This document shows positions 11,751 through 44,468 of a stretch of 64,000 nucleotides of DNA, one piece after another; position 1 is the first letter of the stretch, and the number at the start of each line of letters is the position of its first letter. The stretch is from the NCBI GenBank assembly GCA_001643675.2, contig LSRY02000011.1, positions 558,001 to 622,000 of the forward strand. Direction: 5' to 3'. A program made the position numbers and the translations under genes. The notes under the pieces were generated by a model. The model was not told the origin of the DNA and did not search any database. It worked only from the letters and a program-made list of their open reading frames with translations. The DNA is from Monocercomonoides exilis PA203. Taxonomy: Eukaryota; Protista; Preaxostyla.

Positions 11751-13571
11751 TCATGCTCCGCTTTTCCTTTCTTGAAGTTCTTCTTCATGGAAAGCTGTTG
11801 ATGTTTCTTTTGTTATTTTATCGTTAACTATTTGATGTGTTTGTGCCATCTCTTTCGCTTCGTCAGCTCTCCTCTTGACTATTTGAACTCTTCTTTCAAC
11901 TGGTAGCATTGACAGGATATTTCTATTTAACTCTGATAGCAAATTTGCCATCCATGAAACTGATATTGAAGGGATACCTACAAAAGAACCAGATGAATTT
12001 GAATCACTAGATGATGTTGGTAGAGGTATTGCATCCTTTGTGGTATATCTTTGTGTTACATCATAAATCCCTTCAATTGATACTCCAATTACTCTTGTCA
12101 CTTGCTTTCCCCATCCCGTCTCATAAAGCAATGGCCTGTTAGTTAATCCTTCACAACTGTCAAAGCAAATGTAGCGTGGTTTATTTGAAAAAGGTGAAGT
12201 GTTATTTTTTTCATTTGAAGAAGAAGAGGAAGATGGTTGGGTAGATGAAGAAGCAGCTTCATCGCTGTCTTCTTGATATTCTCCGTGTTCGTCGTAGACC
12301 TCTGTCCACACATGATCCCCTTTTTCTGGTGAAACGTCAACCACAATTCGCGTATGAAATCCCAACGATCTGCATAGAAGAGTAAACACATTCGCAAACT
12401 CTCCACATCTCCCTTTGCGTGTTTCTAGCAGTTTTATTGGATTGTTGTAGCGAAAGAAAAGAGTGCTGTGCGTGCAAACTGGGCAGTAAAATGTCTCGAC
12501 TTTTGAACACATATCTTGTGGATCTGTTTCTGTTCCATCAGTTGACCGATAACCCTTGCTTATTGCAGATGATCCGCATCGCTCGCATTCAATGGAATTA
12601 AATTTAACAAATGTAAAGAAATTTTTAAAAGCAGAGCAAAGCTTGGGTAACACATTAAATGGTGGAGGTTTTGATGGAGGAACCATTGAATCTATTCCAA
12701 GAGAAGTAAGTTCAGGGAGTATTTCTATGGCAAGCGCCCGAGCAGAAGATTGTGCCTCAGGAAATTCATGAAGTTGCACTAACTGATACAAATGTTGAAT
12801 TTCGGATGAAGTTGAGCTTACGTATTGTTTATTTGTAAAAATTGGAGAAAGTTGTGCTGATGGTTGAGCATGTGATGCTGATGAATCCATTTGGGGCATT
12901 TGTTGAGAATTCGATGGATTTGATGGCTGCTGTGTAATGTTTGTTGTTGAAGAAGAGTTCGCTGCTGGGGAACGGGTAACTGGGGCTCGTTCTTGATTTT
13001 TTGATGATTCTTTGTTTGAATAGTCCAATGCCCAATTTAAATGCGCATTTGCCACCGGAGGAGCAGCTGGCATTTCTGACTTTTCAGCGGCTGGTGTTTT
13101 TTTTATTGAGTTCAATTTAATTCCATTTGGATATTGTTCAGATATCCGTTTTTTGTTCTGTTCATCAAGCCGTTTTTGGGTCTCTCTTGCGAAACGTTTT
13201 TGTCTTTCGATACTTTTTTCTATTTCAGATTTAGTTTTAACTGGTTTTTTACTTGATTGGGAAGGAGATGGCGTTGAGTTATATTTTGGTGTAACATTTT
13301 GGTATTTTGACCTCAAAATATCTGTTATTGGATTCGGTTCACCTTTGATATCTTCATTTTTAGAGGATGATTCAGATTTAGCAATACTACTTTTTTTAGT
13401 TACTGAAGACGAGCTTGCTTTTTGCTCCTTTGAATTTGTTTGAACATCTTCAATCCGCTTTTTGACTGCATGAGACTTATATCTTCGCCTTTGCATAAAT
13501 TTTCGAATAACCCGATTAAATGTGTAATATGAAATTAAGCTAATAAATAGTAAAGCCCACAGTGGGTGCAT
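11751..13571 (-). CDS. PNG1: Peptide:N-glycanase (PNG1/NGLY1 family, transglutaminase-like fold)
   Basis: Zn-binding CERC and CPVC; RYNNPIKLLETRKGRCGEFAN (catalytic Cys), DHVWTEVY (His), FDSCEG (Asp), PLLYETGWGK and C-terminal ELQERKSG all match PNGase signature motifs. Confidence 0.93.
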   Translation of the reverse strand: MHPLWALLFISLISYYTFNRVIRKFMQRRRYKSHAVKKRIEDVQTNSKEQKASSSSVTKKSSIAKSESSSKNEDIKGEPNPITDILRSKYQNVTPKYNSTPSPSQSSKKPVKTKSEIEKSIERQKRFARETQKRLDEQNKKRISEQYPNGIKLNSIKKTPAAEKSEMPAAPPVANAHLNWALDYSNKESSKNQERAPVTRSPAANSSSTTNITQQPSNPSNSQQMPQMDSSASHAQPSAQLSPIFTNKQYVSSTSSEIQHLYQLVQLHEFPEAQSSARALAIEILPELTSLGIDSMVPPSKPPPFNVLPKLCSAFKNFFTFVKFNSIECERCGSSAISKGYRSTDGTETDPQDMCSKVETFYCPVCTHSTLFFRYNNPIKLLETRKGRCGEFANVFTLLCRSLGFHTRIVVDVSPEKGDHVWTEVYDEHGEYQEDSDEAASSSTQPSSSSSSNEKNNTSPFSNKPRYICFDSCEGLTNRPLLYETGWGKQVTRVIGVSIEGIYDVTQRYTTKDAIPLPTSSSDSNSSGSFVGIPSISVSWMANLLSELNRNILSMLPVERRVQIVKRRADEAKEMAQTHQIVNDKITKETSTAFHEEELQERKSGA

Positions 13572-14029
13572 TGATTGAGAAATTCTTCTAAAAAAATAAT
13601 TATAAGCATGATCAATAAAATATCAGATTAAAAAAAAATTCAATTATTTTATATTATGATATGATTGTTTTTCAAAACACATTTTCTTGAGATGAAACTT
13701 AAAAAATAAAAAACTTTATTGATATTACAAATATATAAGTTTGTATTTCTTTCATGAAAAAAAAATTACAAATTACAATGCATTTTGAATTTAATAATGA
13801 TATTCCTAAATGAAAAAGAACGTACAACTTATTCAAAATCAAAAATCAATCATTGATGAAGTGAACTTTTGGAAAAAGAAAAAAATTTTTATTGTTCTCA
13901 AAACACAATAACGAAGGAATAATGTCAATAATTTATCGGTGCCCATAAAATTTATCGGGACCTAAAATTTCTGGCTCTTCAGAGCACTTTTAGAAAAAAA
14001 TGAAAAAACAGGAAATTTTAAATATATTA

Positions 14030-14074
14030 TAGATTGCGCACAAAATACCGGACATCGCACAAAATACCGGACAA
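14030..14074 (+). repeat. Left TIR of the pogo-like element, with two tandem CGCACAAAATACCGGACA units
   Basis: Exact reverse complement of 20112-20156. Confidence 0.95.
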
Positions 14075-15149
14075 CATTAACTATAAAGGGAGAATTGAAA
14101 TTTTGTTATAACGTCAAATAAACAACATCTTTTCTTATTATGCAATTAAATTTTGGAAGTTTTTTCCGATTATTTCAATAACTTTCTTAATAATAACCCA
14201 TTAAATTATTGATGATTTGTAGTTATTTCTATTCAATCACATTTTTGTTTTAATTGTTATTTGAATAAAACGTTCAAAGGTGAAAAATTCACTGATTCAC
14301 AAACAAACAAACATATGAACATATGAACAGATATATTTATTTCCTATTAAAAGAATGAAGTGATTAATAAAATTACACATTCACACGCAAATAAAAATAT
14401 AACACAAATTTCCTCAAATATAAATGAATTTCGATATTTTTCTTTTTCATTAAATCAACAATAATCACAAAATAACACAAAAAATTCATTAACAAGTTAT
14501 GAATGTGAATATTTTAAAAAATTAAAAGGATTTCTAAAAAAAACAACGAAATCAAGAAATCGAGCAAAACAACTGTTTGTTAAAATCAAAAAACGTTGTG
14601 ATCTCATGAAAATTGATAAAGATCGGCGGTTAAAAACAGCTATTATAAAAGAAAAAAACAAGTGAAATAATTAGGAAACATTTTTGTGTGAATGAAGTTA
14701 ACAAAAAAAAAAAAAATGATTCAATACCAAGTTTTACAATAAGCAGAAGCAATCCCCTCAAGAAAATGACTGTGAAAAGATAATAGCAACAATATTGTTA
14801 ATAAGAAATGGATTTAAAGCAAAGAAATCAATATAACAAACCTTTTATTTGATCGTTTGATTTTTCTTGATCATTGTTGCGTCTATTAAGAAATGAAAGA
14901 AAGAAATGATCTTCGTGATATATTTTGATCAATACCATTATTTGAGATACAAAATGTATAATAAATATTTTGAAAAATGCTTGTTAAAAAAGTCTTTTTC
15001 TGATAGATTGACAAATTAACTTGTGAAAGAATTGATCGTTTGTGTTTTTATGTTGTGAAGAAAAGATTTTTGATGTTTTTAGCCATCATAAACGGATAGT
15101 CTTCGCAAAACTTATGAAATCATCATCATCCAACCAATCAATCCACAAT

Positions 15150-15990
15150 CATTTTTTTTGTTGACATATCGCTTGATTCTTCATTACACTTCATTTCATC
15201 CTTCATTCACACTTCTAGATAAAAGATAATATGAAAACATCAGACAGTTGATTTCTTATCAAAAATTGTTCCAAACTCCAGTTCAACCAATATTACTATC
15301 GATTTGATCAAAAGAAAAAAAAAGCATTTGTGCTTTTCATTCCACCATCAACATATATCTCACACTTCATCATGAACGGCTTGTGATTTTTCATGATTGA
15401 TTCTTAAACCGATGCGATTGTTATGTTAAAACTCGATGAAATAACAATCCCAATGAACTTCTTTTCTGCAATCGATGTTGATTTCATAGCACATTCTTCT
15501 TCAGTGCCACTCACTTCCCTTTGGCATTCAATCTGCACAATTGTCTCAGTTTTTGCCTTTATACACATTCCGCCAACGTCCACGCATCCAGAAATATTCG
15601 ATTTTTCACACAGAATTATTTCATCTTTAACATTCAGCGTTTTCTTCAAATGACCCATTCCGTTGTTCACATTCTTACAAGGTGCCTTTTCTAATCCACA
15701 ATATTCATTATCCACTCCAGATATTCCATCCACAAACACTGAGTCAGCAAAGTTTCCATCGAGAAATATGAATAAATCGAAATCCCAATCACCGAATGCT
15801 TCTGTTCTATCATGTCCAACAACCGAGTTGTCTTTCTGAGTGATGTTTCCCATGAAGGCGAACAAGGGTTCCTTCACAAAACCGACAAATGATTCACACA
15901 CTAAATACATATCTCTTCCGACGCTTGCATTGTCGGCTGAGAACTTCACAAAAGTGAGATAAAAGATGCGGCTGAAGCTCCTGATGCTTT
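15150..15990 (-). pseudogene. Fragment of the GGAI/Cys-module surface-protein family carried inside the transposon
   Basis: FSADNASVGRDMYLVC and VFVDGISGVDNEYCGLEKAPCKNVNNG parallel FFENIAFSGKDVFIYC and IYVKKGGAEDSMCGTFAMPCGSLDVG in the 38163-44468 protein. No start or signal peptide; degenerates after 15404. Boundaries approximate. Confidence 0.7.
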
Positions 15991-16020
15991 ATAGTTCTTG
16001 ATTGAAATTTTTTCTATTTT

Positions 16021-16057
<37 letters not shown>

Positions 16058-16999
16058 GTTTTGAAAAAAAAAACCGTACATTCTTTTATTTTTTCTTGTT
16101 TACCAGATATTTTCTAACATCTCAGACAAAAGAAATAGCGAATTATTTCATGTGTGACGTTCAATTTTAAAATACGACAATTCAAAGGTTAAAATTGTAA
16201 CAAAATTGTAAGTCCGTCAATTGTTTTCAAAAAATGAGGTTTTTTTCTCCTTTTTTTCTTTTCAAAGACAATTGGTTAATAGAATTGAATCAATGATCAT
16301 TATTTGAAAATAATGAGAGGATGAAGATTATTTGAAAAGAAATTGCACTTTTGAAGATAAAAGCATTAATATTGATATTGCAAATATGGAAAAAAATATT
16401 AGAAAAAGAAAAGGAAAAATCTTAAAGCTCAAAAAGTGGCTTTGCTTGTTTTGAATGTGTGGTGTGGAAGATAAAATTCATCAACAATTTCAATACAGAT
16501 ACAAATAGTCCTCATTTGTAAAATAGTTACAAAAAATATATTCTCAAATGAAGTTATTAGTAGATATCACCTTGTTCAATTAATACAAATGAATAAATTA
16601 ATACACAGAAAGATTCTCTGTTTCATTTATTTAATCATCTGCAAGTTTCTGATAACTGCTACGACAGAATGACATGTTAATACTGATAGAGATGGATGTT
16701 TATTGCGAAATAAAATCATTAATCGTTGACTCTGCTTATGTTTCATCATCAGCAATTGTTTGAGAGAGTGTATTTTCTATAATGCTGATCGTTTCTTCAT
16801 ATTTGTTTGCTTTTCTTCATTTTTTCACTTTGTTAATAAAATATTAACATAAATGTTCTTCCATATTGTTTAACCTTTTCAGAAGCCATGTTTTTCAATT
16901 ATTTTCCTTGTTTGCAAATTCCATTTCATATCTCCAATTCGATGTTTCGTTTGAAATAAGATTTCATTTAATGAAGAATATGAAATGAATTACGTACCC

Positions 17000-17560
17000 C
17001 TCGCCCAAATGAAATAATACTAACAGCAAATATATTTGCCTCTTTATTAAGCTGTTGAACTTGTCATTATGTTATCGATGAACAGGCAATCATCAATCAA
17101 AATGAGATTTGGCTTTTCTTGAGGAGGCAAATTGAATGAAATAACATCAGCAGAATTTCCACCAGTATTTTCGATGCACCTGCATTTGGAAAACAGGAAT
17201 TGACCATTTGTTGAAATAGTTTGAAGCGCAAAATACCAACCAGTTCCACACCAGTTTGTTATTGAACAACTTTCCACTCTGTTTTCAGAAAATGAATAAA
17301 CAGCAGATGATTGTCTTCCATCAATACAAATTGCTCCTCCATGAGGAGCAGAACAGTTTGTGAAATTGGATTTTGAAATATTCTCATTTTGCAAACAGTA
17401 ACTGTATAACGCTCCACCAGCATAATCGCCTGTGATCGAACAATTGTTGAATGAACAGAAATTAATAGATAGATGAGCATTTGTACAAGAAGCATAAAGC
17501 GCTCCTCCATGGCTAGTTCCACCATTTGAATTTTCACATTCGCCTCATGGAAGTGAAGAC
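17000..17560 (-). pseudogene. N-terminal GGA-repeat fragment of the same surface-protein family, inside the transposon
   Basis: Extending ORF 17047..17394 upstream gives ECENSNGGTSHGGALYASC...CSFNNCSITGDYAGGALYSYC...SNFTNCSAPHGGAICI, paralleling WDGCSSTKGGGIFC...SSFVSCKATSSRGGGIYA in the 38163 protein. Bounded by in-frame stops. Confidence 0.72.
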
Positions 17561-17989
17561 TGTTTGCAACAAATAAAACCAGTCTTCGAGGAGTTATTCT
17601 AATTGTTTCACTTCCGATATATGCGATAGGATTAATGATAAACAGATTGTGTGGAGGTGCAAAAGTGGTATTAACTTTAAAGTATATGATATCGACTGTT
17701 TTAAAAAGGAGTATTGATCAAAAAATGTTGACGAATAATGATTAAAGAAACAAATGATTGTTAGAATGATCATATCAAAAAAAAAAAAAAAAAGAAAGAA
17801 AGAACATATTTTAAACATTGTCTTATCAGATAAAGAGTGAAAATATTTATTATCAGATATCTTATTCGTCAAACTCGTAATAATGAAATGAGCGTGTTAA
17901 AAATTGTGAAAAAATGATTGAGATATTAATTTGATCAATTTAACATTTAATACTTTCATCATTGTGAAGATAATATCCAATTGGAAAGT

Positions 17990-19933
17990 TTATTTTTCAA
18001 AAGAAGAAGATGAATACTCTATCGAAGAATCTTCGCTATTCTCTGTGGTTGTGCTATCATGAAATGTGCTTGCCTCTGTGAATGAATCTTCATATAAATA
18101 CATGTCAATTCTTTTTTGAGTTTTGACAGATCTTGTTCGTCGAAATTGATTTATTTCTTTTGCACTCTCAGAATCACTTCCTGACTTCTTGCAACGTTTG
18201 GCTTTCAATCGTTTTGTTTTTCTATCAGTGGGATCACCTACCTTTTTTCTCTTCACACGAAAATAACATTCATCTTCATCGTCTTCCTGTGATGTATCTT
18301 TATCTTTTTCTTTTTTTGATGAATGTTTTCTTTTTTTAGTTTTCGCTAAATCTTCCTCGCGTTTTTTTATCTTGTCTCTCTTTTTCATCAACATTTCGAC
18401 AACATACGATGGATGATCATTTATCCATTCCTTCCAATATTTCATTTCTTCATCCTTTTCTTCATCCTTTTCTTCTTCCTTTTCTTCTTCCTTTTCTTCT
18501 TCCTTTTCTTCTTCTTTCTTTTCTTCTTTTTCATCTCCTTTTTCATCTTCCTTATTATCTTCCTTTTCTTTATCCTGTTTCTTGATCTCTTCTTTTTCAT
18601 CTTTTTGATCATTAATTGACTGAGATGGATTTTCATCCTTTGACATTATTTCTATATGTTGAGCCATTCGAAACTGATCCACTATAACTTTTTGCTTTCC
18701 ATCTTCATTTTTCAATATGATGCCTGCTCTGCGAAATGCAGATCTGTTTGTGAATGGAATTGTACATAATTGATAGCTTTTAACAATACCGGCAAGGACA
18801 TGTGCCTGCTGCCTTGATGGGAATAATGATCGTAACTTTTTTAAATTATTTTTCAGATTTGAGAATGTGACCAAATCCAACGGTGAAAATAAATGTGAAG
18901 AATGTGGCGGAATAAAAATAATACATATCTTGTTTAATTCCATTACACGAAGAGCTTCGTCGCTTGAATGTGCTTTAAAGCCGTCTGCAATAAGAACCGT
19001 TTTTTTGTTTGCTTCATCCTTCATCCTATTAATATGTGGAATAAAACAAATATTAAGCCACTCCAAAAAGATCTGTGAAGTACAATAACCCTTGGATGAG
19101 TTTTTGATGACTACATCCACTCCATCAAGCAAATCTCCAAATATAATAGATTGAACAGTAGCAGTTTTAATTATTAGCATGGGAACAACTGAAGGACCAA
19201 TAAGAGGAATACACCCAATCAAAGAAACAAGTTTTCCATCTCTAACAACTGTATATGAAACATTCTTATCATCCACTTCTTTTGGGCAAATGACTTTCAT
19301 TTTTTTTGCGTCTACGTATTCTTGAATGCCAGTTTCATCAACGCAAAAAACAAATTGTGGTTCCACATTTTCTAAAATTTTTTCTAATTTATTAACATAC
19401 TCTCGACCAAACGATTGCTTCACTTCTTTTCTTTTTATTTCCATTGGCTTTGCAAGCCTTTTTTTTATTTTGTCATTGTAATTCAACAGAAACTTACGAA
19501 CGAAAGAGTAGGAAATGCTTAAATTGTAAGTTGAATTGATATAGGTTTGTAATGAGGAAATAGTGAATGGACATCCTTTGTAATATTTTTCAATACAAAG
19601 CTTTACCAATTCCTCCTCCTTTTCTTTTGATATTGCACTTGGCCTTCCTCTTTCTTTTAGCTCTTTGTTTGCCATTTTTATTAATTCATCTATTCTTGAT
19701 TTTTTGAAATTAACAAACAACTGCAATCCTCTCGATGATGAGTATTTCGGATAATAACGAGTGAGTAGCTCTTGTAAATATTTCAACATGATAGGTACAT
19801 TTTCTGGATTAAGAGATTCCAATTCATTGAATATAATTATTGCAGTATCGTAATCGATATTTTCAGTCAGTTTTTCCAAAAGCTTTGATTTTTGCAACAA
19901 TGAACTTCCATTTTCAAACGTGTCTTCCTCCAT
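17990..19933 (-). CDS. pogo-family DDE transposase (CENP-B-type HTH plus DDE_1 domain, DD35D)
   Basis: RGRPSAISKEKEEELV...SYSFVRKFL (HTH); VFCVDETG (D1), VLIADGFKAH (D2), IPPHSSHLFSPLD (D3) with 35 residues between D2 and D3. Uninterrupted ORF from ATG 19933. Confidence 0.92.
   Translation of the reverse strand: MEEDTFENGSSLLQKSKLLEKLTENIDYDTAIIIFNELESLNPENVPIMLKYLQELLTRYYPKYSSSRGLQLFVNFKKSRIDELIKMANKELKERGRPSAISKEKEEELVKLCIEKYYKGCPFTISSLQTYINSTYNLSISYSFVRKFLLNYNDKIKKRLAKPMEIKRKEVKQSFGREYVNKLEKILENVEPQFVFCVDETGIQEYVDAKKMKVICPKEVDDKNVSYTVVRDGKLVSLIGCIPLIGPSVVPMLIIKTATVQSIIFGDLLDGVDVVIKNSSKGYCTSQIFLEWLNICFIPHINRMKDEANKKTVLIADGFKAHSSDEALRVMELNKICIIFIPPHSSHLFSPLDLVTFSNLKNNLKKLRSLFPSRQQAHVLAGIVKSYQLCTIPFTNRSAFRRAGIILKNEDGKQKVIVDQFRMAQHIEIMSKDENPSQSINDQKDEKEEIKKQDKEKEDNKEDEKGDEKEEKKEEEKEEEKEEEKEEEKDEEKDEEMKYWKEWINDHPSYVVEMLMKKRDKIKKREEDLAKTKKRKHSSKKEKDKDTSQEDDEDECYFRVKRKKVGDPTDRKTKRLKAKRCKKSGSDSESAKEINQFRRTRSVKTQKRIDMYLYEDSFTEASTFHDSTTTENSEDSSIEYSSSSFEK
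18452..18512 (-). repeat. 12-bp tandem repeat encoding (EEEK/DEEK)n in the transposase tail
   Basis: Repeated TTCTTCCTTTTC/TTCATCCTTTTC units on the + strand. Confidence 0.8.
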
Positions 19934-20111
19934 TGACAATTTTTTGTAAGTTTTTTTGATCTAATGGGATAAATATACACAAATTATATATTTTTTGATA
20001 TATAAGAAAGAGTCAAATTTTGAATTCAATGTTATTTATTTTATCTTTTTATCAAATAAATATTTCAGTTCTATTAAAACCAAAAAATAGAACAACCCAT
20101 TAATTTATATT

Positions 20112-20156
20112 TTGTCCGGTATTTTGTGCGATGTCCGGTATTTTGTGCGCAATCTA
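20112..20156 (-). repeat. Right TIR of the pogo-like element
   Basis: Exact reverse complement of 14030-14074. Confidence 0.95.
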
Positions 20157-21141
20157 TATTATATGCTATTCCTGTAAATATTTTTTTGTTTTTTTTTTTT
20201 TTTTTTTGATTTTCGTGAAAAGATCTGGTGTTTTTTGTTTTATTTTTAAGATCAAAGACTTGCTTATATTTTCACGAGCTTTTTGTTTTGATATTTTTAA
20301 GTGTTGTTATTGTTATTGAACATAACTTCTTTATAATTTTGGTTATTTTTCATTGTTTAACACTTTATTTTCTTTTTTCTTTTTCCATTTCACTAAATTT
20401 CACTCAATTTCGACATATTGAAAAATTCATTTGAAGAATGAAGACTTATCGTTTATCAAAAGGGTGAATGTATAAATTTTCAACAAATAAAGATATGCTA
20501 AAGGAATAAAATCTGTATATTTTTATGATCGTGATTACAATACTAAAACACTTGTTTTTGCGTTTTTTCACTTCAATTGCTTTAAATCATATTGTTTTAT
20601 TTCAAAATTTTCGTGATGATCATTTCAATCCTTTTTGCAACTATTTTTGAATATTAAAAAACAAAGCAACTCAAAAATCACAACAAAATCTTCCATTTGT
20701 CGAAATTTAGTGAAATGGAAAAAGAAAAAAGAAAATAAAGTGTTAAACAATGAAAAATAACCAAAATTATAAAGAAGTTATGTTCAATAACAATAACAAC
20801 ACTTAAAAATATCAAAACAAAAAGCTCGTGAAAATATAAGCAAGTCTTTGATCTTAAAAATAAAACAAAAAACACCAGATCTTTTCACGAAAATCAAAAA
20901 AAAAAAAAAAAAAAAAAAAAAATATTTACAGGAATAGCATATAATAACATATTTAAAATTTCCTGTTTTTTCATTTTTTTCTAAAAGTGCTCTGAAGAGC
21001 CAGATAATTTAGGGACCGATTAAAAAAAGTGGACATGACAAATAACTCAACCTAATTATGTTTTCAAGATAATCAGTTTAATAAACTTTATTAACATATT
21101 GAACTGACTTGAAATGTGTTTATTTCTCACATAAAAAACAT

Positions 21142-21420
21142 ATGGGGGAAAATACGGACTTTCAAGCTTTTTTTGCACAAAGCATGAAAAAATTGCTTCA
21201 CTTAGACCATTTTTTGACTAAACCAGACTTCAAAAACAATTTGATTTTCATATTTGCAAGCAAATATCATTGATGAAATAAAAAGATGTTTTGTGACATC
21301 ACATGTATTTCAAAAAATAAACCCATTTTTTTCTAATTTTTTTTGATCACAAAAAATCAATGAAAAGTGCATAATTTTTCAATGAAAATGACTGAAGTCA
21401 AATATTTTGTCCCATTTCAA
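21142..21420 (+). repeat. Dispersed repeat copy 1 (starts ATGGGGGAAAATACGGACTTTCAAGC)
   Basis: Aligns by eye with 60966-61235, with several shared 15-30-nt blocks. Confidence 0.8.
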
Positions 21421-21558: not shown

Positions 21559-21936
21559 CAGATATCGAATAAAAGAATGGACATCGCACAAAATACTGGA
21601 CAGAATCGATTTCACAATAACTGCAAGAGGAATAATTCTGACAATTTTCCTCAAAATATATCTCATCAATACAAACTCATCTGGCATACAAAACTTTCAA
21701 AATGGCTTCATTTGTGCTCAGAAAAAAAATGTTATTTAATTCTCGGTGAAACAGGATTTTGAGTTTCTCCGAAATTTTAAAAATAATTTTCTTTGAGAAC
21801 AAATGAAGCCATTTTGAAAGTTTTGTATGCCAGATGAGTTTGTATTGATGAGATATATTTTGAGGAAAATTATCAGAATTATTCCTCTTGCAGTTATTGT
21901 GAAATCGATCTTGTCCAGTATTTTGTGCGATATCTG
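21559..21936. mobile_element. 378-bp palindromic MITE related to the pogo-like element
   Basis: TA|CAGATATCG...CGATATCTG|TA termini, ~140-160-bp inverted arms, and ATCGCACAAAATACTGGACA, one mismatch from the pogo TIR unit. Confidence 0.85.
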
Positions 21937-22614
21937 TACTTCATTTTGCAAACTTTAAAAAAAAAGCATCTTGATGAAACATAAATAATTAATAACTGAA
22001 TGGAACGATGCATGCCATTTTCATCGCAAATAAAAATATTTTCTTTTCGAAATGAAAGTTTTATTTAAAAGAATAAAATTAATTTTTGTTGTTAAAAACC
22101 AAGAAAGAATTTATCTGAAAGTTGAATTGTGAAATAAAAAAGTTTTTCAAAATTATTTGCATATTTTGTAATTTCACATTCAAATTTCAAAATTTTTCTG
22201 AAATTTCACAATAACACATAAATTGTGCAATTCATCAATTGTGAGAGTTTTTGAAAACAAAAACATTATTCAAAATTTGATATAGACATAGTAGATAAAT
22301 GACAACAATCAAAATTAAAGATTAGAATGAAAAAATTTTTTTCGTAAAAGGAAAAAATTATATTTGGAGATCGTTATGTTTTCCTTATTTCGTGGCTTAA
22401 AAGGAGCAAAGAAAAAAGAAGGATGCTGTCCAAGAAGAAAGAAACAGATGACATAAATTCTTATATGACTAATAGTATGAAACTTTTTCTTTCTATTCAA
22501 AATTGATTTTTTTAAAAATAAATAATGTACATAATTAAAAATTACTAACACACGAACATCAACACAATTTGATACACTCATTTTGTTTATTAATTGGAAA
22601 AAACTGAAGATGGA

Positions 22615-25600: not shown

Positions 25601-28600
25601 TTTATTGTCCAACCTTCTCTAACTTTATAAAATATTTCTGTAATCTTTAGATTTCAAGCAATTTTCTGGAAAGTCACACCACTCACGATTCTATGCAGAT
25701 ATTGTTCAGAAGCAACATAATCGTATTCGGCAGTTTTCTTCCACAAAGTTAGAGACAGCATCAGCTGTGATGGACGCCTTGCAGATCGTGTTTGCTCAGT
25801 TGGAGATGAAAGCATATCCCTTCCTGTTCAACACTTCTGATGAAGAAACACCAGAACCACATACTGAAAAGGAGAAAAAGACGGAAACGGCAGCATCAAG
25901 TACATCAACACAGACACCTCAAACTTCAATGGGCATTTGCTCTTCTTCTGTTTCTCTGGATCCGCTGGTGTTAGCTTACCGCGATAAAGCAGATCAGCAA
26001 GTTGACATTCGAAAGCAGCACGATCTGCGGGAATTCGGACTTCGACTTCTGGAGTTGCTGGAAATAGAAGCCGAAGTAGAATGCGAAGAGGCGAGGAACT
26101 TTATTGAAGAATTGTTTCTTGGAGTCCGCGTGACAGAACAGATCTGCTGCAACTCTCACCGGATTTGCCATTCTGAGCCATTCTTTTTTGTGGATGTTGC
26201 TATTGGGGAGAGTACATCACTGCAAGAGGCACTTGAAAAGGAGCGAAGAGGGCAAAAGCTAAAGAGGCTGTTTTGCCCCATCTGCCAAAAGAACCAAGCT
26301 AAGAGACTTTGCATGGATAAGGCTGAAGGAGAGGTTAAAAGAGAAAAAGAGAACACAACAGAAAGAGAAGAAGAAGAAGGAGGAGGAGAAAAAGAAGAAA
26401 AGACCAATTCAAGAAATTTTATTAAAGAGAAAGGGGACGAGAGCAAACAGCCGAATGGAGTTGGAGAAGGGATTGTAAGATGCTATTTGGCAGATGTTCC
26501 AAACACTCTTTTCTTTTATCTGCAGCGATTTCAGTCTGATGGTATCAAAGCAGTTAAAATGGATGCTCATTTTGAGTTTCCGATATACGGGCTGACTATT
26601 TCCGACTACACGAAAGAAGAAGAAGAAGAAGAAGATGATGATGATGAAGGAATTGAAGAAAAACAACAAATTGATTTTGATAGCACAATGAACAACTCTG
26701 AACAATCTAGCTCATCTTCGCCATCTTCTTCATCTTGCAACTTAGATCATACAAATACTGAGACAAAAAATAAACCATTACTCAAAGAGATACAAAATAT
26801 TGGATCAGACAAGCAGAAAGCCAAGAGCTCTTCGAGAGACGAATCTTATTCTGTGTTTGATTTGGTTGGAGTGATATGCCACAAAGGGACTATAAACAAA
26901 GGACACTATTATTCATTTGCTAAGGAACGAGAAGCACCCTTTCGCTGGTTCAAGTTCAACGACCATCGAGTTACTGTTGTGGCAGAAGAAGCATTGAAGG
27001 AAGAGTGCTTCGGCTCAACAGCACATGCACAAAAAAAGCTTCGTGGCACAAACATCTCAGATTCTGCACATGATATGGAGGATCGAGCGGATGACAAGTC
27101 TTCCAATGCTGGAAACGATTCTGGCTTTGAGCGTTTAGCCAACAAAGGAAAGAAAAGAGATTTTGGAGCGATTTTGTTGATGTACCAGAGAAGGCATCCA
27201 ATAAATGAGTGGGAACAGCGAGAGACGGAACTTATTCAGAAGCAATTTAATAGAAGCTTTCCATCACATGAAACTTACACTTTTTTATCTCCTCTACTGG
27301 AATCTCTGCTTTTTCCCCTGAGAATAGTCAAATCGTCTGAAGATGCATTAAATCTTTTAAAAAACTTGAAACCACAACAGCAGCATTATCCAATTTTGTT
27401 CCATCTAACAAATCAAAGTTTGCCTGCTCCTCTGCAATTGGCTGTAATACCTAAGCTGGTGAGAGACGCATGTGGAATCAACTCTTTCGCAACAGTGAAG
27501 CGTTCCATTAATGAGATGGAAGAGGAAATTCAGGAGAACATGCCAAATGAACAATTTATTCAGGAAATAATATCAGACGATTTTGCAGAACTTTACAAGT
27601 GGATATGCGCAAAAGAGGAAGAACTAGCATATCTTCAACAAGTGAAGTCGCGGCATTCAGATTTATCGTATGAAGATTCAATTCAACAAACGTCTTCTCA
27701 AACATCTTTGGAAGGTTTGTCAACAAATATTGATACACTATCGTCTTGTTGTGCTCCTGTTTCACCGCATTGGATGCGTTATTTGATTTGTATTGGTACA
27801 TTTGCTTTTTCTGAAGATCGCTTCAAAGCAGAATGCGAGCACATTCAAAGCTCAATTATGAAGACTTCTTCTATTGTTCCATTGCTGTGTTGTTTCTGCG
27901 AATTGCTTTTTGTGGAACAGTCAAACATGAACAGTGCATTTTATCACATTTTTTTCAATGCAGAAAAGGCTAAAAGAGATGCATTTCTTAATATGATTCA
28001 CATGCTTATTACAAAAGCAGTGGATGAATGTGAAAAACAAAATTGCGAATTGATTGGAGGGAAAATGTGTGAGAATGAGGAATGTTTGTCGAAAGCTTAT
28101 GATTCAAGTGAGATGCGCTCCACGTTTGTTACAATTGCATTTTTGAATGGAATATTTGAGATGATTTCTACAGCCGTAAAACAAAATTATCGGTCCTCCT
28201 CAGTTCTTTTATCTCTTCTATCCGACTTTTTACCACCTAATCTACACCAATTTGTATCAGACATAGAATTGAAACAATCTCCAACACAAACATTGTCAAA
28301 TGTTGCAATTTCTCAAAATTGCACTTCGGAATTGAGTTTGGTGATTTCACCCTCGCCTACCTGCTCCAAACATCCAATTTGGATCCATTCTCTTCTTGCT
28401 GTATCGCATTTACCAGACATAATTCTTGAAATTCTTTTGCATTATCAAAAGATTATTAACGGCAATAATGGAGCTGATGAAGAAATAAAATGTCAGAAAG
28501 AGGTGAGAACAGTCATGATCGACAAGTCATTTTTTGAAAAACTGGCAAGCCTATTAACTGAATGTATTTTGCAGACAGATCAAGAAGTAATTAGAGATAT

Positions 28601-31600
28601 CTTTCAACAAATGAAGCATCTCGATATGGAATCGTTCTTCGAGGAATATCCATTTCTAGAAAGGAAATTTGATTTTTTTCCTTCAAAAACATTCACACCA
28701 CGTCTAACTTCAGAAATATTAGACTTATTTTTAGTAAATTTATCTCCAGAGCTTTTTATTGCAGCGAGTTGTTCAGTAATTGCATCTTGCAACGTTGAAA
28801 ATGGATACCTGGAAAAACAATTGCCAGACGAAAGCTTTTTATGCACCGCAGCTCAGCAAATGCAAACATCAATCTGTTCTGAATCAACGCACTTTTCAAC
28901 CGAATGTGATCAAAAAACTGATAAAGGAAAGGATAGAAACTCCGAATTGTTATGTTCCGCCTCTTTGCCGTCTTTCCTCAGTGACAAATCTTCCGCAACA
29001 ATCGAAACTTGCTTAAACTGGGTTTTAGAAAAAGTTGGTGAAGATTGTTCATTATTGCAAAAGAGCACAATGATTAACTTTTTCTTTATAGTTATATCAA
29101 CAGCTTTAACAGTCATGTCTCAACTTAACTTGCGAAAACGTGAAGAGGATAAATTTGATGAAAGAGATAAAGAAATAAGGCAAACAACGAGCGATCATTG
29201 CGACGATTTCTTCCAGACGATAACAAAATGTACCTCGGAAGATGATGCGGAGGATAAGAGAAATACAGAGCCTATGATAACAACCAACTTGACTCTTCTT
29301 TCTTCTAATTATACAGAAAATGCTTTTTATATAAATGAAATAGATGAATCACAAACAAGTCAAGAATCCAGTGATGGGTCATCAACTTATTCATTAAAAA
29401 CATATATGGATCTATTTTTTGAGAAGTGCCTTGTGCAGTCAGAGGAAAAATTTGAAAGAACAGGATCTATAATCATTGATCAGATAAAGATGTTTCTTGA
29501 AAACTGTACTAACTTTATACTATCTACACAAAATTTCTACAAACTTCTTCAGAGTGAAAAAGTAATTTCAATTCTTCTTATGCTTTTGAAGGGGAATTAT
29601 GCATTTGAAGTTAAAAGGTGTGCCATTGCTCTTCTATGCAGAACGCTAATGGCACAATCAATTGAGTTCAAAAAAGATTCAGAAATAGAATTACATGGAG
29701 TTGACGAGAAGCTTGATAGCAGTTTGAAACAAGAAAAAAATAAAAAGAGATACATCAGCAAAACATATGAATTGTGGAAGTCGATGACTAAAGCTATTCC
29801 TGCAACTACGGATCCAAAGGAAGATGAGAGATTTGATAAACATTTTGGAAAGAAGGCATCTTCTGATACGAAAATTCATAAATTTACAAATTTGTTGATC
29901 GAGAAGCAAATGAAAGAGCTACATATTCTCGAAATGGGTGTTGAAAATGCATCATATTTTTGCGATGCTGCAAATGAAGTCGAAGAAACGGAGGAATGGA
30001 ATGAAGGATACGTGTTTGATGAAGCAAAACAACTGACATACAAAGATGCTATTGGAGATGTGTTGAGATGGGTATTTTCTGAGCTGAGCAAATGGATGGG
30101 AAAGCTATACAGGATTCTTTATGCAGCTTGTACAAGTTTTCATAAATTTGATAATCCGCAATCAACTTTCCAAATAATTGAATCTTTGCCTTCTGAAATG
30201 ATTATTTGCGTTAGTATTGCTTCAATGTTTGATCCAAGGAGCAATTTGTTTAAAGAAATGTTGAAAGATTTTGCAACTGTTGGGCTATTTCTTTCGTGGA
30301 TGCCTGATTACAAGAGTTTTTATTCAACCAGAAATAACAGCCTAGGAAATGAAGGGAGAAATAAATTGAGGATATCCGAGAAATGTTTTATAAGAGAGGA
30401 ACAGGACAGAAGTGAGAGTAAGAGATGGATGGCTAATGTTACATTGGAACTTTTGAAGTTTAAAAAATCTAAGGAAGAGGAAGAGGAAGAGGAGGAAAAG
30501 AAGATCATTGATGCTTGCTGGATAGTAGTTTCAGCAATGAAACGCGCAGCTGGAGAACCGACAAGACTTCCTGATTTATGCTTAAGCACAAAGGAATTGG
30601 TTGATACGAAGAAATTTGAAGAGATTTCTGGCTTTAAAGAAAAAGATTACGAAAGAGATAGGAAAGATAATACAATGAAAACAACACATTTAACAAAAGA
30701 CAAGAATTACGAAACAAGAAGTACGTTAAAGGAGGAATTTAGAAAGAGAACAGAATTTATGAATGAAGTTGAGCAACATCTTGAATTACCAACATCAATT
30801 TTTGAGAGATTGACAACAGAAGCAAGAGTTTTTGGATCAAACGATGGAGTTGATTTGTGGAAGCGATTGCTGGATGAAGAAATCAACTCCAAGGAAAGCA
30901 AGGAAAAAAAGAAAGCGTTCACCACAAGAGAAGAAGATAGAAAGATGAGGCCACAGTTGAAAATTGAGACTGAATCCACAAAAGATATGATGAGTAGTTT
31001 ATTTGGGAAAAGAAAAGCTTTGATGGTGTTGAATTCTGAAGAAAAAAAAAATTCAGCGCTTTTTGGAAAGATGGAAAAAGACAAAGAGAAGAAAGAAGAG
31101 AAGTGGATGTGCTCAGATGAAGGCTGCAGAATGAATTGTCCTTCGTTACCTTCTAAGTGGGTGCTGAGGCAATTTGAAGGAACAGTGATGAAAGATGACT
31201 TGAAAAAGCAAAACTTTCAAAAGGAAACAGAAATGGATGATTCAAATAGAAAAGAAAAAATTAATGATATTTCTAGTCATGAATTTGAGGATAAAAAGTT
31301 ACAATTAATTTATGACAAATCACATGATACGATCGTTTCGTCAACAGAAAAATTCAAGTTGGCTATTGCAAGACATATTGAGTTGGCAAGAAATCAAACA
31401 CTACAGCCAGCTCTTGAAATACCAAAAATACCTGAGATTTCATCGATGAATTCAAAAACAAATCAGCTTTCATCGATTCAGAATTTCCATAAAGATGGTG
31501 GTTTTGTTGGATCAATGAAAACAGAAATTAAAATTGAGGGCAGCACGAATGAATGTGTGAATGGAAGCTGCATATTTAAACAATATGAACCGGAGTTAAT

Positions 31601-32039
31601 GGTAGAAAAGTCTTCATCTTTAAAAGAGAAAGCAACATTATTTGATGGTTTAGATTGTGAGAAGAAACTTGGAAGTACATTCTTTTTAGAAGGCGAAAAG
31701 AAAGCACACGAAGAAGAAAGAACTATGGCAACAAAAAGTTCGTCGAACGAGGCCCAGTTTCCAGTGTTGAATTCAAAAGAATTACAGTCCTTTACATTTA
31801 AACCGTTTGTACCCCCGACATTGACGATGCAAACTCCTCAATCAACTCAAAAGGCTTTAACAGTCAACTCAGAGAAAGTTAGCAGCAACTCGTTCATGCC
31901 AGTTTCTTTTGGGTCAAAGGGGGTTAAAAGCGGAGCATTCAGGGGAATGTCGAAAGAACCAAGATCAACTAGAGGAGGGATAGTTGCACCGAAAATACAA
32001 TTCAGAGAATTAACTGCAGAAGAGTTGAAAAAAAGTTGA
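22615..32039 (+). CDS. Large ubiquitin-specific protease (USP/peptidase C19), ~3100 aa; intron 25520-25650
   Basis: Cys box GITNPSSQCFMNAFVVQLF in ORF1; KQHDLREF, LQRF and His box LVGVICHKGTINKGHYYSF...WFKFND in ORF2. The phase-1 GT...AG intron joins them in frame (G|AT). Start uncertain. Confidence 0.9.
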
Positions 32040-38053: not shown

Positions 38054-41000
38054 ATGCACCATTTCGTTTTCTTTTCTTATTGATAATCTGTTTTCAATGA
38101 TTTAAATGCTATTTAATGCTTTTCTACTGTCGCATTTTAAATAATTGATGCAAATACTTTAGTTCTTGATAATACTTTTCAATGGATTACTTTCTCAAAA
38201 TATTCATCTTCAATTTTATGAAGCTTCAAATATCGAATCAACTCTAACTATTTCCAATTCTTCAATCAATTTTATATCAACGCATCATCTTTTTGATAAA
38301 AGTTTAACAGCAATTTTTCTTGATTCTCGATCTACTTGCTATTTTCATGGATGCTCAATAATTTCTTTATCAAGTCAAAATCAGCCATTCTTGAAGGCAA
38401 AAGGAAGAATAAATCTGAATAATTTTACTGTGGTGGCCCCAAACATCAAAAACAAGCGTGCTTTTTTCCCGAGTTTGATCTCAACCTCGAGTACAACAGA
38501 AATTTTTATAACTTTTACGAACTTGGAAAATTATAATGTTATTGGTTCCGGAAGCGTTTTCAGAAAGGGAGAATGTTTTTCCGAAGTAATATTTCAATCA
38601 GAAATATCAAACATAAGCACTGGATCGGAAAAAGATAATCGTTCAAAACAGAACATGAACACTTTCACAAGTGAATTGAAGAACTGCCATATAAGAGATT
38701 CAATAAATGTTCTTGAGGGAATGATAACATGTGGCACTCGGAATTCTTATTCGTTCGAAGCCTTCAACTCTTCATTTATACAAAATTATAGAAAAGACAA
38801 TTTGTTGGAAGCAAAAGAACGCGTGGACACACCTAATTCTGCATCGTTTTCGTCATGCGAATGGGACGGCTGTAGCTCAACGAAAGGTGGAGGAATATTT
38901 TGCCACGATAACTTTCAAGCGGATCTGAAAGTGGAAAGTTCGTCTTTTGTGTCTTGCAAAGCTACTTCCTCTAGAGGAGGTGGAATATACGCTCTGAATA
39001 TTGGAAAGTGCTTGATATATCAAACAAACTTCTCGTTATGCACAGCATCTGGGATTTTTACGGATCACGGAGGTGGCGGAGTCCAGATTGAAGAGGTGAC
39101 AACACAGCATATCTTTGAGAACTGTATTTTTTCCAACAACGGCGCTTCTAACGATGGCGGTGGAGCATCTATTCTGAACAGCTATGCCACTATTCAAAGT
39201 GATTGTGTTCTGTTTTGTACTTTTGTCAACTGTCGCTGTAACAACACGCTTAATGGGAATGGAGGTGGGCTGGAGCTATGGGGAGCACAAACCCCAGCAG
39301 TTGTGAGAAGCTGCCTGTTCCATAAGTGCACCTCTGGAACTGGAGGCGGTGGTGTGACTGTGGAGATCTCCACTTACAACAGAGTCACTGTTCTCTTTTA
39401 TTGCTTCTTCCACTTGAACACAGCTTTGACTGCTGGCCTGGACGCGGTGCTGTTTGGCGGCGGAGATGTGAACAGGATCGATCCAAGTTGCCGAAGCACA
39501 TCCACAAGCAGCAATCGAGTCTCCAAGACGTATGCAGTGGACTATGGATTAGGGAGCTGGCTGCCTTGCCAAGGTGGAAGAACACGGTTTGTGGCGTCGC
39601 CTTCCTATCAGTCTGAAGCTGCCAATCGTGTTCAGTGCGGATTCGATCCACAGAAGCCATGCGCGTCAATCAACTTCTGTATTTCGCAGATGATCCCGTT
39701 TATTGTGAATGAGCTTGTTATTGACTCCAGCGTCTTTGTTCAAAATGAAGGTATAATCCTTGATTCCACTTTTTCCATTGAAGGGAAAAGCAAAGCTGGT
39801 ACGCTTCTTCAATGTGAGTTTTCTGAGGAAGGTACTCCGCTGATTACTGTGGATGAATGCACTTTTGCAGTGAAGCATATTTCTATTCGTCAGGATATAT
39901 CCATTACAAGTAATTGCAAATCTCCGTTGTTAGATGCCAAGAAAAACTGTGATGTGGAATTTAATGACATGGATATTTCATTTAAGATAGATGATCCTTC
40001 AGATGCGAGCGGAAGCAGCCTTCAGGCTCCGGTGTTTCGAATAGAGCACAGTGACTTATCACTGACGCAGGTGTCTGTTTCGCATCTACGATGCTTTTAT
40101 TCAGTCATTTCTCACACAGCAAGTGGAGAAGCTGCCAAGTTAACTTTTTCAAGTTGCGATTTCACTTCAATTGCTCGCAGCGAGAGCGGTGCTGCAATTG
40201 TTGATGAAAAGACAGAGCCTTTAACACTGGTTGTTGAAAACTGTGTTGTCACCAATTGTGGGTCAGATACTTCAAACGATGGAGGATCTATCAACGTTGT
40301 CGTTGGAACAGTGGGTTCTATTTCTGTCACTGGAGGACAGTTCGTTGGCTGTTATTCATCAGAAGAAACTGGAAAAGGAGGTGCAATTTGTCTGAAGCTT
40401 TCAGAAGCCGATGAGAAATTCTTGATTAATGTTGGTAAGTTTTCTGATAATATTGCTAAATATGGCTCTTCGCTATTCGTCCGTTCGCCAAATCTGGAAC
40501 TCACAGCTCTTTCTGGAAAAATCACAGGGCTGGAGTCGACCAGCACGGTGCTCACACACCAGGGCTATGACAACAACGATGAAACAGTGGCAATCCCATT
40601 GGTAAGCTTCATTATGCCGGCAACTGAGCATTTCATTTCGAGCACATCGGAGAATTTCAAGGGCTGTGGGTATGAAGTGTACCCGTGTCAGACGATGTCA
40701 TTTGTGCTTTCAGAGCAGAGGCAGTCAGTTAGCATTGTTTTAGCTGCAGACTTCGCTCTAAAGGAGGAAGTGTCAATCCAGTCGAGCAGTGTGAGTGTTC
40801 GTGGAGTGAATAACGCTGGCGATATGAGCAATCCGGAAGAAGAAGAAGAAGAAGCAACAGAGCAAATTCTGAGAGTAACCGAAAGCGGTTCAGAAAAGGA
40901 GGCAATTGTGACGGTCGAGGAAGGAGGATCTTTGGCAATGAATGGTTTTTCTTTTTTGATCCCCTTGGAGTTGCAAACACACTCATCGTTGTTTAAACAT

Positions 41001-44000: not shown

Positions 44001-44468
44001 TCTTCTGTGCTGGAGACAGCAGCTGATGAAACAGAAGTGTCTGTGTCGATCCTTTATGGCGATTCCACCCCAAAGGCATCAACGACTTATTGGAATCTGA
44101 AGAACAGAACTGTGCCTGATGTGGACCCTACACAGGGAGGAGATAACGGAAACAATGGACTTTCAAATAAGAACGCATCATGGGCTGTGACTGCGTTTGT
44201 GATTGTGCTTGTGGTTTTAATACTGACAGTGGTAGCTGTGTTGGTTGCGTTTGTGTGCAAAAGAAAGAAAAGAGTGTATGTGGACGAAACGGGACATCCC
44301 TATGGTCCTCTTCCAGAAAATGACAATTCCTTGTATTTCAGTTATATGCCAGGGATGATAGAAAATCAAGTCCCCCAGAAATACAAGGATATCGTTCGAA
44401 ATGGGAAAATAGCATATGGAGACGAGAAATTGCTGATCATTTCGAGCACAATTGATAGGGAACTTTAA
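38054..44468 (+). CDS. ~2100-aa type-I surface membrane protein with GGAI/FxxN beta-helix-like repeats and Cys modules
   Basis: Repeated GGGIY/GGAI/GGALY and FxxN/FxxC motifs, repeated CG..xxPC modules, and C-terminal TM (WAVTAFVIVLVVLILTVVAVLVAFVC) followed by KRKKR. A probable micro-exon 38054-38065 plus intron 38066-38162 gives a signal-like MHHFFLIILFNGLLS (tentative). Confidence 0.85.

What the first reader, a model, noticed from the sequence alone, without database searches (positions are those of the whole stretch)
14030..20156. Transposase-encoding pogo (DD35D) element carrying ~3.9 kb of host-gene cargo ('Pack-pogo')
Seen: perfect 45-bp TIRs, a TA TSD, an intact CENP-B-HTH + DD35D transposase occupying only a third of the 6127 bp, and passenger DNA (14075-17989) containing pieces of a host surface-protein family. 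Established: pogo/Tc1 elements are usually 1-3 kb with little besides the transposase, and gene-fragment capture is best known from Pack-MULEs, CACTAs and Helitrons, mostly non-autonomous. Inference: this is a recently mobile, possibly autonomous gene-capturing pogo element in a protist.
Basis: partly seen in the sequence, partly recalled or inferred. Interest (0 to 1): 0.85.

Follow-up and report, generated by a model that had tools for sequence, protein, structure and literature searches.

The report
Pogo transposon carrying old kinase-gene fragments
This is a real, probably still mobile 6.1-kb pogo-type jumping gene of the protist Monocercomonoides exilis that carries two decayed pieces of a giant surface receptor-kinase gene, but its whole family inherited those pieces from an old capture, so this copy did not pick them up recently.

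Summary
Window 14030-20156 is one discrete 6,127-bp insertion with perfect 45-bp TIRs and a TA duplication. It sits in a ~1-kb multicopy foldback repeat, and the uninterrupted copies of that repeat give a paralogous empty site. The minus-strand ORF has a Pfam DDE_1 domain and a DD35D triad, folds like Mos1 and Sleeping Beauty, and is under purifying selection (dN/dS 0.11-0.17). No CENP-B-type HTH was detected.

The passenger DNA holds two pseudogenised pieces of the ectodomain of a ~3,000-aa receptor-type protein kinase family with more than 150 copies. Together they are only about 1.36 kb of the 3.9 kb; the rest is element-specific non-coding DNA.

A twin differing by 0.6% lies on another contig with different flanks, so the whole unit moved recently. 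The capture itself is old: lineages whose transposases differ by dS 0.6-0.8 carry the same pieces with the same breakpoints, and cargo-only derivatives and hundreds of MITE ends exist. The lineages are mosaics and show a gene-conversion tract, which points to gap repair with template switching.

This is a new variant of known transduplication (Pack-type) biology. Other first-stage notes on this genome, on other DNA and unchecked, also report cargo-carrying pogo elements. No reads could be laid.

The parts
14028..14029 (.). TA target-site duplication, left copy
   Evidence: Paralogous uninterrupted sites carry a single TA.
14030..14074 (+). Left 45-bp terminal inverted repeat, made of two 19-nt direct subrepeats that are presumed transposase binding sites
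   Evidence: The subrepeat motif has 532 genome hits against 0 for the reversed control.
14075..15187 (.). Element-specific non-coding 'left arm'
   Evidence: No ORF above 54 aa. It matches only other copies of this family, at 9 loci. It is 89% identical to copy L002, but L002 and L003 are only 61% identical here, so the arm is recombinant.
15188..15973 (-). Host fragment B: pseudogenised piece of the receptor-kinase ectodomain (host aa ~917-1177)
   Evidence: tblastn gives 67-69% identity at E 1e-86. More than 150 host paralogs sit in 2,600-3,100-aa open frames. DNA similarity to host genes ends at about 15191-15203, whereas element copies stay similar beyond that point.
15974..16972 (.). AT-rich non-coding middle segment of unknown origin
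   Evidence: No host similarity, although host paralogs are 69-87% identical over the corresponding stretch. It is found only in element copies. It has no bounding TIRs.
16973..17543 (-). Host fragment A: pseudogenised piece of the same ectodomain (host aa ~373-563)
   Evidence: tblastn gives 52% identity at E 1e-50. The 115-aa ORF inside it hits 150+ host loci at 56-68% identity. The A-to-B spacing of 1,451 bp is close to the 1,521-1,548 bp seen in host genes.
17544..17989 (-). Spacer / presumed 3' untranslated region of the transposase gene
   Evidence: 76-77% identical to L002 and L003. No ORF of interest.
17990..19939 (-). Transposase gene. The ORF is listed from TTG at 19939; the likely ATG is at 19933, giving 647 aa. 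DDE_1 domain, DD35D triad, acidic/basic low-complexity tail.
   Evidence: dN/dS is 0.11-0.17 between lineages.
19940..20111 (-). 5' subterminal region, presumed promoter / 5' UTR
   Evidence: 85% identical to L002 and L003.
20112..20156 (-). Right 45-bp terminal inverted repeat
20157..20158 (.). TA target-site duplication, right copy
13902..14029 (.). Left part of the ~1-kb foldback repeat into which the element inserted
20159..21058 (.). Right part of the same foldback repeat (130 matches listed, 40 of 177 candidates scored)

Best explanation
Window 14030-20156 is a full-length, probably autonomous DNA transposon of the pogo superfamily (IS630-Tc1-mariner group) of Monocercomonoides exilis.

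How it moves: the DD35D transposase presumably binds the paired 19-nt subrepeats in each 45-bp TIR. It cuts the element out and pastes it into a TA, carrying everything between the TIRs with it.

What it carries: downstream of the transposase gene, on the same strand, lie two decayed pieces (A and B) of the ectodomain-coding part of a giant receptor-type protein kinase gene family. An ancestor of the whole element family incorporated them once, probably as one contiguous ~2.6-kb slice covering host aa ~312-1190. Since then they have travelled as passive passenger DNA and picked up stops, frameshifts, deletions and a replaced middle.

How the family evolves: the lineages keep exchanging segments by gene conversion. 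The likely route, for that exchange and for the original capture, is repair of the excision gap from ectopic templates with template switching.

Shown: the boundaries, the TSD and empty site, recent movement of the whole unit, the host origin of A and B, the shared architecture across old lineages, selection on the transposase, and the mosaicism.

Inferred: binding to the subrepeats, autonomy, and the capture mechanism.
For: Discrete insertion:
- Perfect TIRs and a TA TSD.
- A paralogous empty site in a multicopy foldback repeat.

Recent mobility:
- Copy C91:994971-1001100 differs by 37 substitutions and 4 indels over 6.1 kb. It has unrelated flanks and its own TA TSD.

Transposase:
- Pfam DDE_1 at E 1e-19.
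- The catalytic columns D199/E200/T201/G202 and D317 are invariant, and 'PLD' D353 gives DD35D.
- The model's best fold matches are Mos1, Sleeping Beauty and Metnase.
- Five intact ORFs occur in the genome.
- dN/dS is 0.11-0.17 at dS 0.57-0.80.

Host origin:
- Fragments A and B match 150+ open frames of 2,600-3,100 aa.
- Those proteins have a signal-peptide-like N-terminus, one TM segment at aa ~2560 and a C-terminal kinase domain.
- This matches the large protein tyrosine kinase family described for M. exilis, which overlaps its 'unclassified repeats' (PMC8767320).

Old, shared capture:
- L002 and L003 carry B (aa 916-1183) plus a ~200-bp remnant of A.
- L004 and L006 carry A (aa 312-464) ~320 bp past the transposase stop.
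- The 3.3-kb cargo-only copy L012 carries aa 856-1162.
- C12 and C58 show the same spacing between left arm and B.
- The B/left-arm breakpoint is shared.
- dS of B between WIN and L002 (0.68) equals that of the transposase (0.70).
- The AU test does not reject one clade of the element-borne fragments (p = 0.28).

Neutral decay:
- There are 1-4 stops per copy.
- L002-L003 differences are flat over codon positions.

Mosaicism:
- Segment identities conflict between lineages.
- A 46-bp tract of 7 synonymous differences has L001 carrying the L002 alleles and the window copy carrying the L004 alleles.
Against: - Expression and present activity are therefore untested.
- Single capture is not proven. 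In the tree the element-borne fragments fall into three separate long-branch groups inside a star-like host family.
- The window's fragment B is closer at synonymous sites to some host genes (dS 0.375) than to other element copies (0.68).
- Differences between the three element lineages show a third-codon-position excess. This fits some later input from host paralogs.
- The 1-kb middle segment between A and B is unexplained.
- Pfam did not recognise the N-terminal DNA-binding domain as a pogo-type HTH.
Confidence: 0.8

Rival explanations
1. The cargo was captured once but later overwritten, or it was captured more than once. Under this reading, element-borne fragments in different lineages were refreshed by gene conversion from different host kinase paralogs. 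Hundreds of homologous templates exist in the genome.
For: - The window's fragment B is nearer to host genes at synonymous sites (dS 0.375-0.43 to L026 and L014) than to the fragments in L002, L003 and L012 (0.68-0.73).
- The element fragments form three separate groups in the tree.
- There is a third-position excess among element lineages (0.35-0.40 against 0.22-0.29), but none within the young L002-L003 pair.
- Gene conversion between copies is directly visible in the transposase.
Against: - The outer breakpoints and spacing are the same in all lineages.
- dS of B equals dS of the transposase for WIN-L002.
- The AU test does not reject a single clade (p = 0.28).
- The nearest host was picked from about 40 paralogs, which biases the minimum distance downward.
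- AT-biased decay of GC-richer third positions could mimic the codon-position signal.
Confidence: 0.2
2. The cargo is kept because it does something for the element or the host. For example, a read-through transcript or a small RNA might act on the kinase family, or a secreted ectodomain piece might act as a decoy.
For: - The fragments are retained in every transposase-bearing lineage over dS ~0.7.
- They have the same orientation as the transposase.
- NG86 pN/pS is 0.47-0.61 in the host frame against 0.75-0.99 out of frame.
Against: - Stops and frameshifts differ between copies.
- L004 lacks B, L012 lacks A, and L002/L003 keep only ~200 bp of A.
- The youngest pair evolves without codon-position bias.
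- No long ORF or Pfam domain is present in the cargo.
Confidence: 0.06
3. This individual copy captured the host DNA recently.
For: The fragments are 67-78% identical in protein to host genes.
Against: - The best host match is only ~80% identical in DNA.
- The same fragments occur in lineages that are ~20% divergent in transposase protein.
Confidence: 0.02
4. The structure is an assembly artefact, or the cargo is a separate transposon nested in a small pogo element.
For: None was found.
Against: - An independently assembled twin has the same structure.
- Diverged copies share the architecture.
- A clean empty site exists.
- There is no internal TIR motif, and no inverted repeats bound the middle.
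- The non-host cargo occurs nowhere outside this family.
Confidence: 0.02

Closest known systems
pogo superfamily of IS630-Tc1-mariner transposons, Fot-like / DD35D type (Gao et al. 2020, PMC7386202)
   Same: DDE_1 catalytic domain, DD35D spacing, TA TSD, and 40-60-bp TIRs (their 'type 2', typical of Fot and Fot-like elements). The superfamily has been reported from Excavata. The element has a single transposase ORF within the reported 300-977 aa range.
   Different: At 6.1 kb it exceeds the 1.2-5.2 kb range given there. Two-thirds of it is non-transposase DNA. The CENP-B_N / HTH_Tnp_Tc5 motifs were not detected. No phylogeny against named pogo families was run here.
Pack-TYPE transposons, including Pack-Mariner of rice (PMC8903248; Pack-CACTA, PMC6379663)
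   Same: TIR elements that hold fragments of host coding genes and move them around (transduplication). The cargo-only derivatives here (for example the 3.3-kb copy on contig C1) fit that definition.
   Different: [quoted passage not shown] Here the transposase-encoding master copies carry the fragment. The host is a metamonad protist, and one old capture is shared by the whole family rather than many diverse captures.
Host-gene incorporation into transposable-element sequences outside plants: Turmoil-1 of C. elegans (PMC2572040) and the Repbase survey, which includes MARINER2_DM (PMC3597677)
   Same: Host coding sequence has become a stable part of a transposon family's sequence.
   Different: In Turmoil-1 the captured sequences lie in the inverted terminal repeats. 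Here they lie internally, 3' of the transposase gene, and come from a hugely expanded receptor-kinase family.

Membership tests
pogo superfamily (ITm group) | DDE_1-type RNase H-like catalytic domain | tested here: met
   Pfam PF03184 scores E 1.2e-19 and 71 bits against a cut-off of 22. The best fold matches are Mos1, Sleeping Beauty and Metnase.
pogo superfamily (ITm group) | DDxD catalytic triad, with x = 29-56 reported | tested here: met
   D199, D317 and D353 have 35 residues between the second and third D. The first two catalytic columns are invariant in an alignment with relatives of 21-41% identity.
pogo superfamily (ITm group) | TIRs and a TA target-site duplication | tested here: met
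   Perfect 45-bp TIRs. TA lies at 11 of 12 ends of six copies. A single TA is present at paralogous empty sites.
pogo superfamily (ITm group) | N-terminal CENP-B_N / HTH_Tnp_Tc5 (or psq) DNA-binding motifs | tested here: inconclusive
   Pfam gives only sub-threshold HTH_32 (E 1e-4 to 1e-2) in three lineages. The model shows a confident all-helical N-terminal region, aa 15-156. Distant relatives P0003 and P0005 carry PF03221 and PF05225.
pogo superfamily (ITm group) | Phylogenetic placement among named pogo families (Fot, Passer, Tigger and others) | not tested
   No reference sequences were available through the tools.
Pack-TYPE transposon | Host coding-gene fragment between the TIRs | tested here: met
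   Fragments A and B match the host kinase family at E 1e-50 and 1e-86.
Pack-TYPE transposon | Non-autonomous (no transposase) | tested here: not met
   The window copy encodes an intact transposase. Only derivatives such as L012 lack it.
Autonomous transposon | The encoded transposase mobilises its own ends | not testable with these tools
   This is inferred from the intact ORF, the purifying selection, the near-identical twin and the MITE family that shares the TIR motif.

The most novel reading that the evidence does not exclude
The pogo family and the giant receptor-kinase gene family exchange sequence in both directions. In this reading, element-borne ectodomain pieces are repeatedly refreshed from host paralogs by gap-repair gene conversion. 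They could also serve as dispersed donors that reshuffle ectodomain segments among kinase genes. That would make a mobile element part of the machinery that diversifies the surface-receptor repertoire of this protist. It could also contribute to the kinase-related 'unclassified repeats' that fill a third of its genome.
Probability: 0.1. Interest if true: 0.75.

Novelty: new variant of a known kind. Interest (0 to 1): 0.5.

Why it matters
Tc1/mariner/pogo elements are usually minimal, and gene-fragment capture is known mainly from non-autonomous plant elements. Here a transposase-encoding pogo element of a mitochondrion-less protist has carried host receptor-kinase fragments through a long diversification, and it still moves at 6.1 kb. 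This shows that pogo elements tolerate large cargo in nature. It gives a clean system for studying how cut-and-paste elements acquire and exchange DNA during gap repair: an empty site, a near-identical twin, diverged lineages, cargo-only derivatives and MITEs are all present in one genome. It also bears on the annotation of M. exilis, where kinase-like 'unclassified repeats' make up about 35% of the assembly.

Tried and rejected
No read-level check of the assembly, of excision or of expression was therefore possible.
- The look-up of sequencing runs found only four DNA runs of one sample and no RNA run.
- Two whole-protein transposase searches of the genome failed with a machine error. The N-terminal 413 aa worked.
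Copies on C6, C12, C58 and C69, and the 43%-identical sister family on C16, C17 and C19, could not be read. Their structure is inferred from hit coordinates only.
- The look-up of encoding contigs for P0002 found nothing.
- The idea that the cargo comes from the big ORF at window 38163-44465 was rejected. tblastn against the cargo gives only E 0.006. That ORF is 25-30% identical to the kinase-family ectodomain and has no kinase domain.
- A composite-transposon origin (an internal remnant TIR) found no support: there is no internal TIR motif.
- The middle segment as a nested element found no support: it has no bounding inverted repeats and no copies elsewhere.
- The PDB sequence search gave nothing useful.
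Full report
**Organism and place.** The window is G000:C5:558001-622000 of an 82.3-Mb, 101-contig genome. The nearest database proteins to the transposase are named as Monocercomonoides exilis. The size and contig number fit the ONT assembly described in PMC8767320.

**1.
- Positions 14030-14074 and 20112-20156 are perfect 45-bp inverted copies.
- Each TIR holds two 19-nt direct subrepeats. Their 12-nt core occurs six times in the window against 0.15 expected. Four of the six are in these TIRs and two are in a small related element at 21560-21937.
- TA lies directly outside both ends. The same is true at 11 of 12 ends of six copies read in full, and all six have unrelated flanks.
- One lineage (L004) starts CAGTTTG instead of TAGATTG with TA still outside it, so the TA outside the TIR is the duplication.
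- The ORF at 17990-19939 (-) is 649 aa as listed from a TTG. The first ATG is codon 3 (19933), and sister lineages start with ATG at codon 1.
- The ORF takes up 32% of the element.

**2. It is one discrete insertion**
- The 79 bp left of the element are an inverted copy (92%) of window 20945-21023.
- Together with 20157-21058, these 79 bp belong to a ~1-kb foldback repeat (130 matches listed, with 40 of 177 candidates scored).
- Left flank + one TA + right flank aligns across the junction, without a gap, to ten arms of that repeat in five other loci.
- This paralogous empty site shows that all 6,127 bp, cargo included, entered as one unit with a TA duplication.
- A second copy lies at C91:994971-1001100 in different flanks with its own TA. 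It differs by 37 substitutions (0.6%) and four indels in homopolymer or low-complexity runs.
- Misassembly and nested-insertion readings are therefore very unlikely. The non-host cargo occurs nowhere outside this family, and neither an internal TIR motif nor bounding inverted repeats are present.

**3. The transposase**
- Pfam gives DDE_1 (E 1.2e-19) plus a sub-threshold HTH_32 match at aa 95-151. No CENP-B_N or HTH_Tnp_Tc5 match appears in any of three lineages.
- In an alignment with relatives down to 21% identity, the catalytic columns D199-E-T-G and D317 are invariant. 'PLD' D353 follows with 35 residues in between, which gives DD35D.
- An AlphaFold model of aa 1-411 (mean pLDDT 66) has a confident helical N-terminal region and an RNase H-like core. 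Its best PDB matches are Mos1, Sleeping Beauty and Metnase/SETMAR.
- The genome holds five intact ORFs of this family and at least four degraded ones. The next family is 41-43% identical.
- Between lineages the first 467 codons have dS 0.57-0.80 and dN/dS 0.11-0.17. The transposase has been kept functional for a long time.
- The 19-nt TIR subrepeat, allowing one mismatch, occurs 532 times in the genome against 0 for the reversed control. Most occurrences are pairs 330-365 bp apart, which marks a MITE family of hundreds of ends.

**4. The cargo**
- Two stretches derive from a host gene, on the same strand as the transposase and in N-to-C order.
  - Fragment A is 16973-17543, matching host aa ~373-563 at 52% identity.
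  - Fragment B is 15188-15973, matching host aa ~917-1177 at 67-69% identity.
- Each fragment hits 150 or more loci, many inside uninterrupted 2,600-3,100-aa frames.
- A representative host protein (L014, 3,035 aa) has a signal-peptide-like start, one strong TM segment near aa 2560 and a C-terminal kinase domain. It is a receptor-type kinase with a ~2,500-aa ectodomain. This fits the large protein tyrosine kinase family that PMC8767320 reports as overlapping the 'unclassified repeats' of this genome.
- The A-to-B spacing in the element (1,451 bp) is close to that in host genes (1,521-1,548 bp).
- The 1 kb between A and B has no host similarity, although host paralogs are 69-87% identical over that stretch. 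Its origin is unexplained.
- The 1.1-kb left arm and the 0.45-kb spacer are also non-coding and specific to the element.
- Host-derived DNA is therefore ~1.36 kb of the 3.9 kb of passenger DNA.

**5. The capture is old and shared**
- L002 and L003 (transposase ~80% identical in protein) carry B (aa 916-1183) and a ~200-bp remnant of A.
- L004 and L006 carry A (aa 312-464) ~320 bp past the transposase stop.
- L012 is a 3.3-kb copy with both TIRs and no transposase. It carries aa 856-1162, which is more of the A-B interval than the window copy keeps. That fits an originally contiguous slice.
- Copies on C12 and C58 show the same spacing between left arm and B.
- Host DNA similarity stops at window ~15191-15203 in about 40 paralogs, while element copies continue. 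The distal breakpoint is therefore shared.
- dS of B between the window copy and L002 (0.68) equals that of their transposases (0.70).
- All copies of B carry 1-4 stops.
- The young pair L002-L003 differs evenly over codon positions (0.208 / 0.168 / 0.208), which indicates neutral decay.

**6. What does not fit a simple single capture**
- In a maximum-likelihood tree with 39 host paralogs, the element fragments form three long-branch groups in a star-like family.
- The AU test does not reject one clade (p = 0.28).
- The window's B is closer at synonymous sites to some host genes (0.375) than to other element copies.
- Differences between the three element lineages show a third-position excess.
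- Later conversion from host paralogs therefore remains possible. I give it about 0.2.

**7. Mosaic lineages**
- The left arm is 89% identical between the window copy and L002, but only 61% between L002 and L003. Those two are 83-95% identical elsewhere.
- Window 18537-19100 is 94% identical to L004, against 76-80% in the neighbouring segments.
- All seven transposase differences between the window copy and its twin lie in 46 bp (18845-18890). All seven are synonymous. The twin has the L002 alleles and the window copy has the L004 alleles.
- Gene conversion between copies is thus visible directly. Repair of the excision gap from ectopic templates, with template switching, is the established route to chimeric and internally deleted cut-and-paste elements. 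It has also been proposed for Pack-type capture (PMC6379663). I infer it here for both the mosaicism and the original capture, but it is not shown.

**8. Comparison with what is known**
- By Pfam domain, triad spacing, TSD and TIR length, the element fits the pogo superfamily. PMC7386202 reports that superfamily from Excavata, with total lengths of 1.2-5.2 kb and 40-60-bp TIRs typical of Fot and Fot-like elements. This element is longer than that range.
- Gene-fragment capture by Tc1/mariner-type elements is documented for non-autonomous Pack-Mariner in rice (PMC8903248).
- Host sequence in transposon families outside plants is documented for Turmoil-1 (PMC2572040) and in a Repbase survey (PMC3597677).
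- What is new here is the combination: a transposase-encoding pogo, in a metamonad, with one old capture retained across all lineages, plus cargo-only derivatives.

**9. Earlier notes of the scan**
- Note s1-465350 says the cargo matches the family of the ORF at 38054-44468, in the same N-to-C order.
  - The order is right.
  - That ORF is only a distant relative: E 0.006 against the cargo, 25-30% identity to the kinase ectodomain, and no kinase domain.
- Other notes on this genome report further cargo-carrying pogo elements on other DNA. I did not check them.

**10. Limits**
- No reads could be laid, and no RNA run holds the stretch.
- Places 18467-18536 were kept out of every later search.

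Noticed in passing
window 21560-21937: A ~378-bp, almost fully palindromic MITE flanked by TA. Its ends (CAGATATCG...) and its single 19-nt subrepeat (TCGCACAAAATACTGGACA) are related to the pogo TIR. The genome holds hundreds of such ends.
   Followed up: partly
window 13902-14029 + 20159-21058: A ~1-kb foldback repeat with long internal inverted arms (130 matches listed, 40 of 177 candidates scored), into which the pogo element inserted. Its type is unknown.
   Followed up: partly
window 18845-18890: Seven synonymous differences to the 99% twin are clustered in 46 bp. The twin carries the alleles of lineage L002, so this is a gene-conversion tract between transposon copies.
   Followed up: yes
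window 21138-21414: A ~270-bp repeat lies 120-985 bp beyond the transposase-side end of the window, L001 and L004 copies, in different orientations, and also matches locus L005. This may be chance in a repeat-rich genome or a shared insertion neighbourhood.
   Followed up: no
window 38163-44465: A 2,101-aa open frame with no Pfam domain. It is 25-30% identical to the ectodomain of the giant kinase family but lacks the kinase, so it is a distant surface-protein relative and not the source of the cargo.
   Followed up: partly
window 11751-13571 (-) and 25644-32036 (+): Neighbouring genes: a 606-aa transglutaminase-like protein (Pfam Transglut_core) about 460 bp from the element, and a 2,131-aa protein with a ubiquitin C-terminal hydrolase domain.
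   Followed up: no
L012 4855-8136 (G000:C1:293855-297136): A 3.3-kb copy with both TIRs that carries kinase fragment aa 856-1162 and no transposase. It is a true Pack-like non-autonomous derivative of the family.
   Followed up: partly
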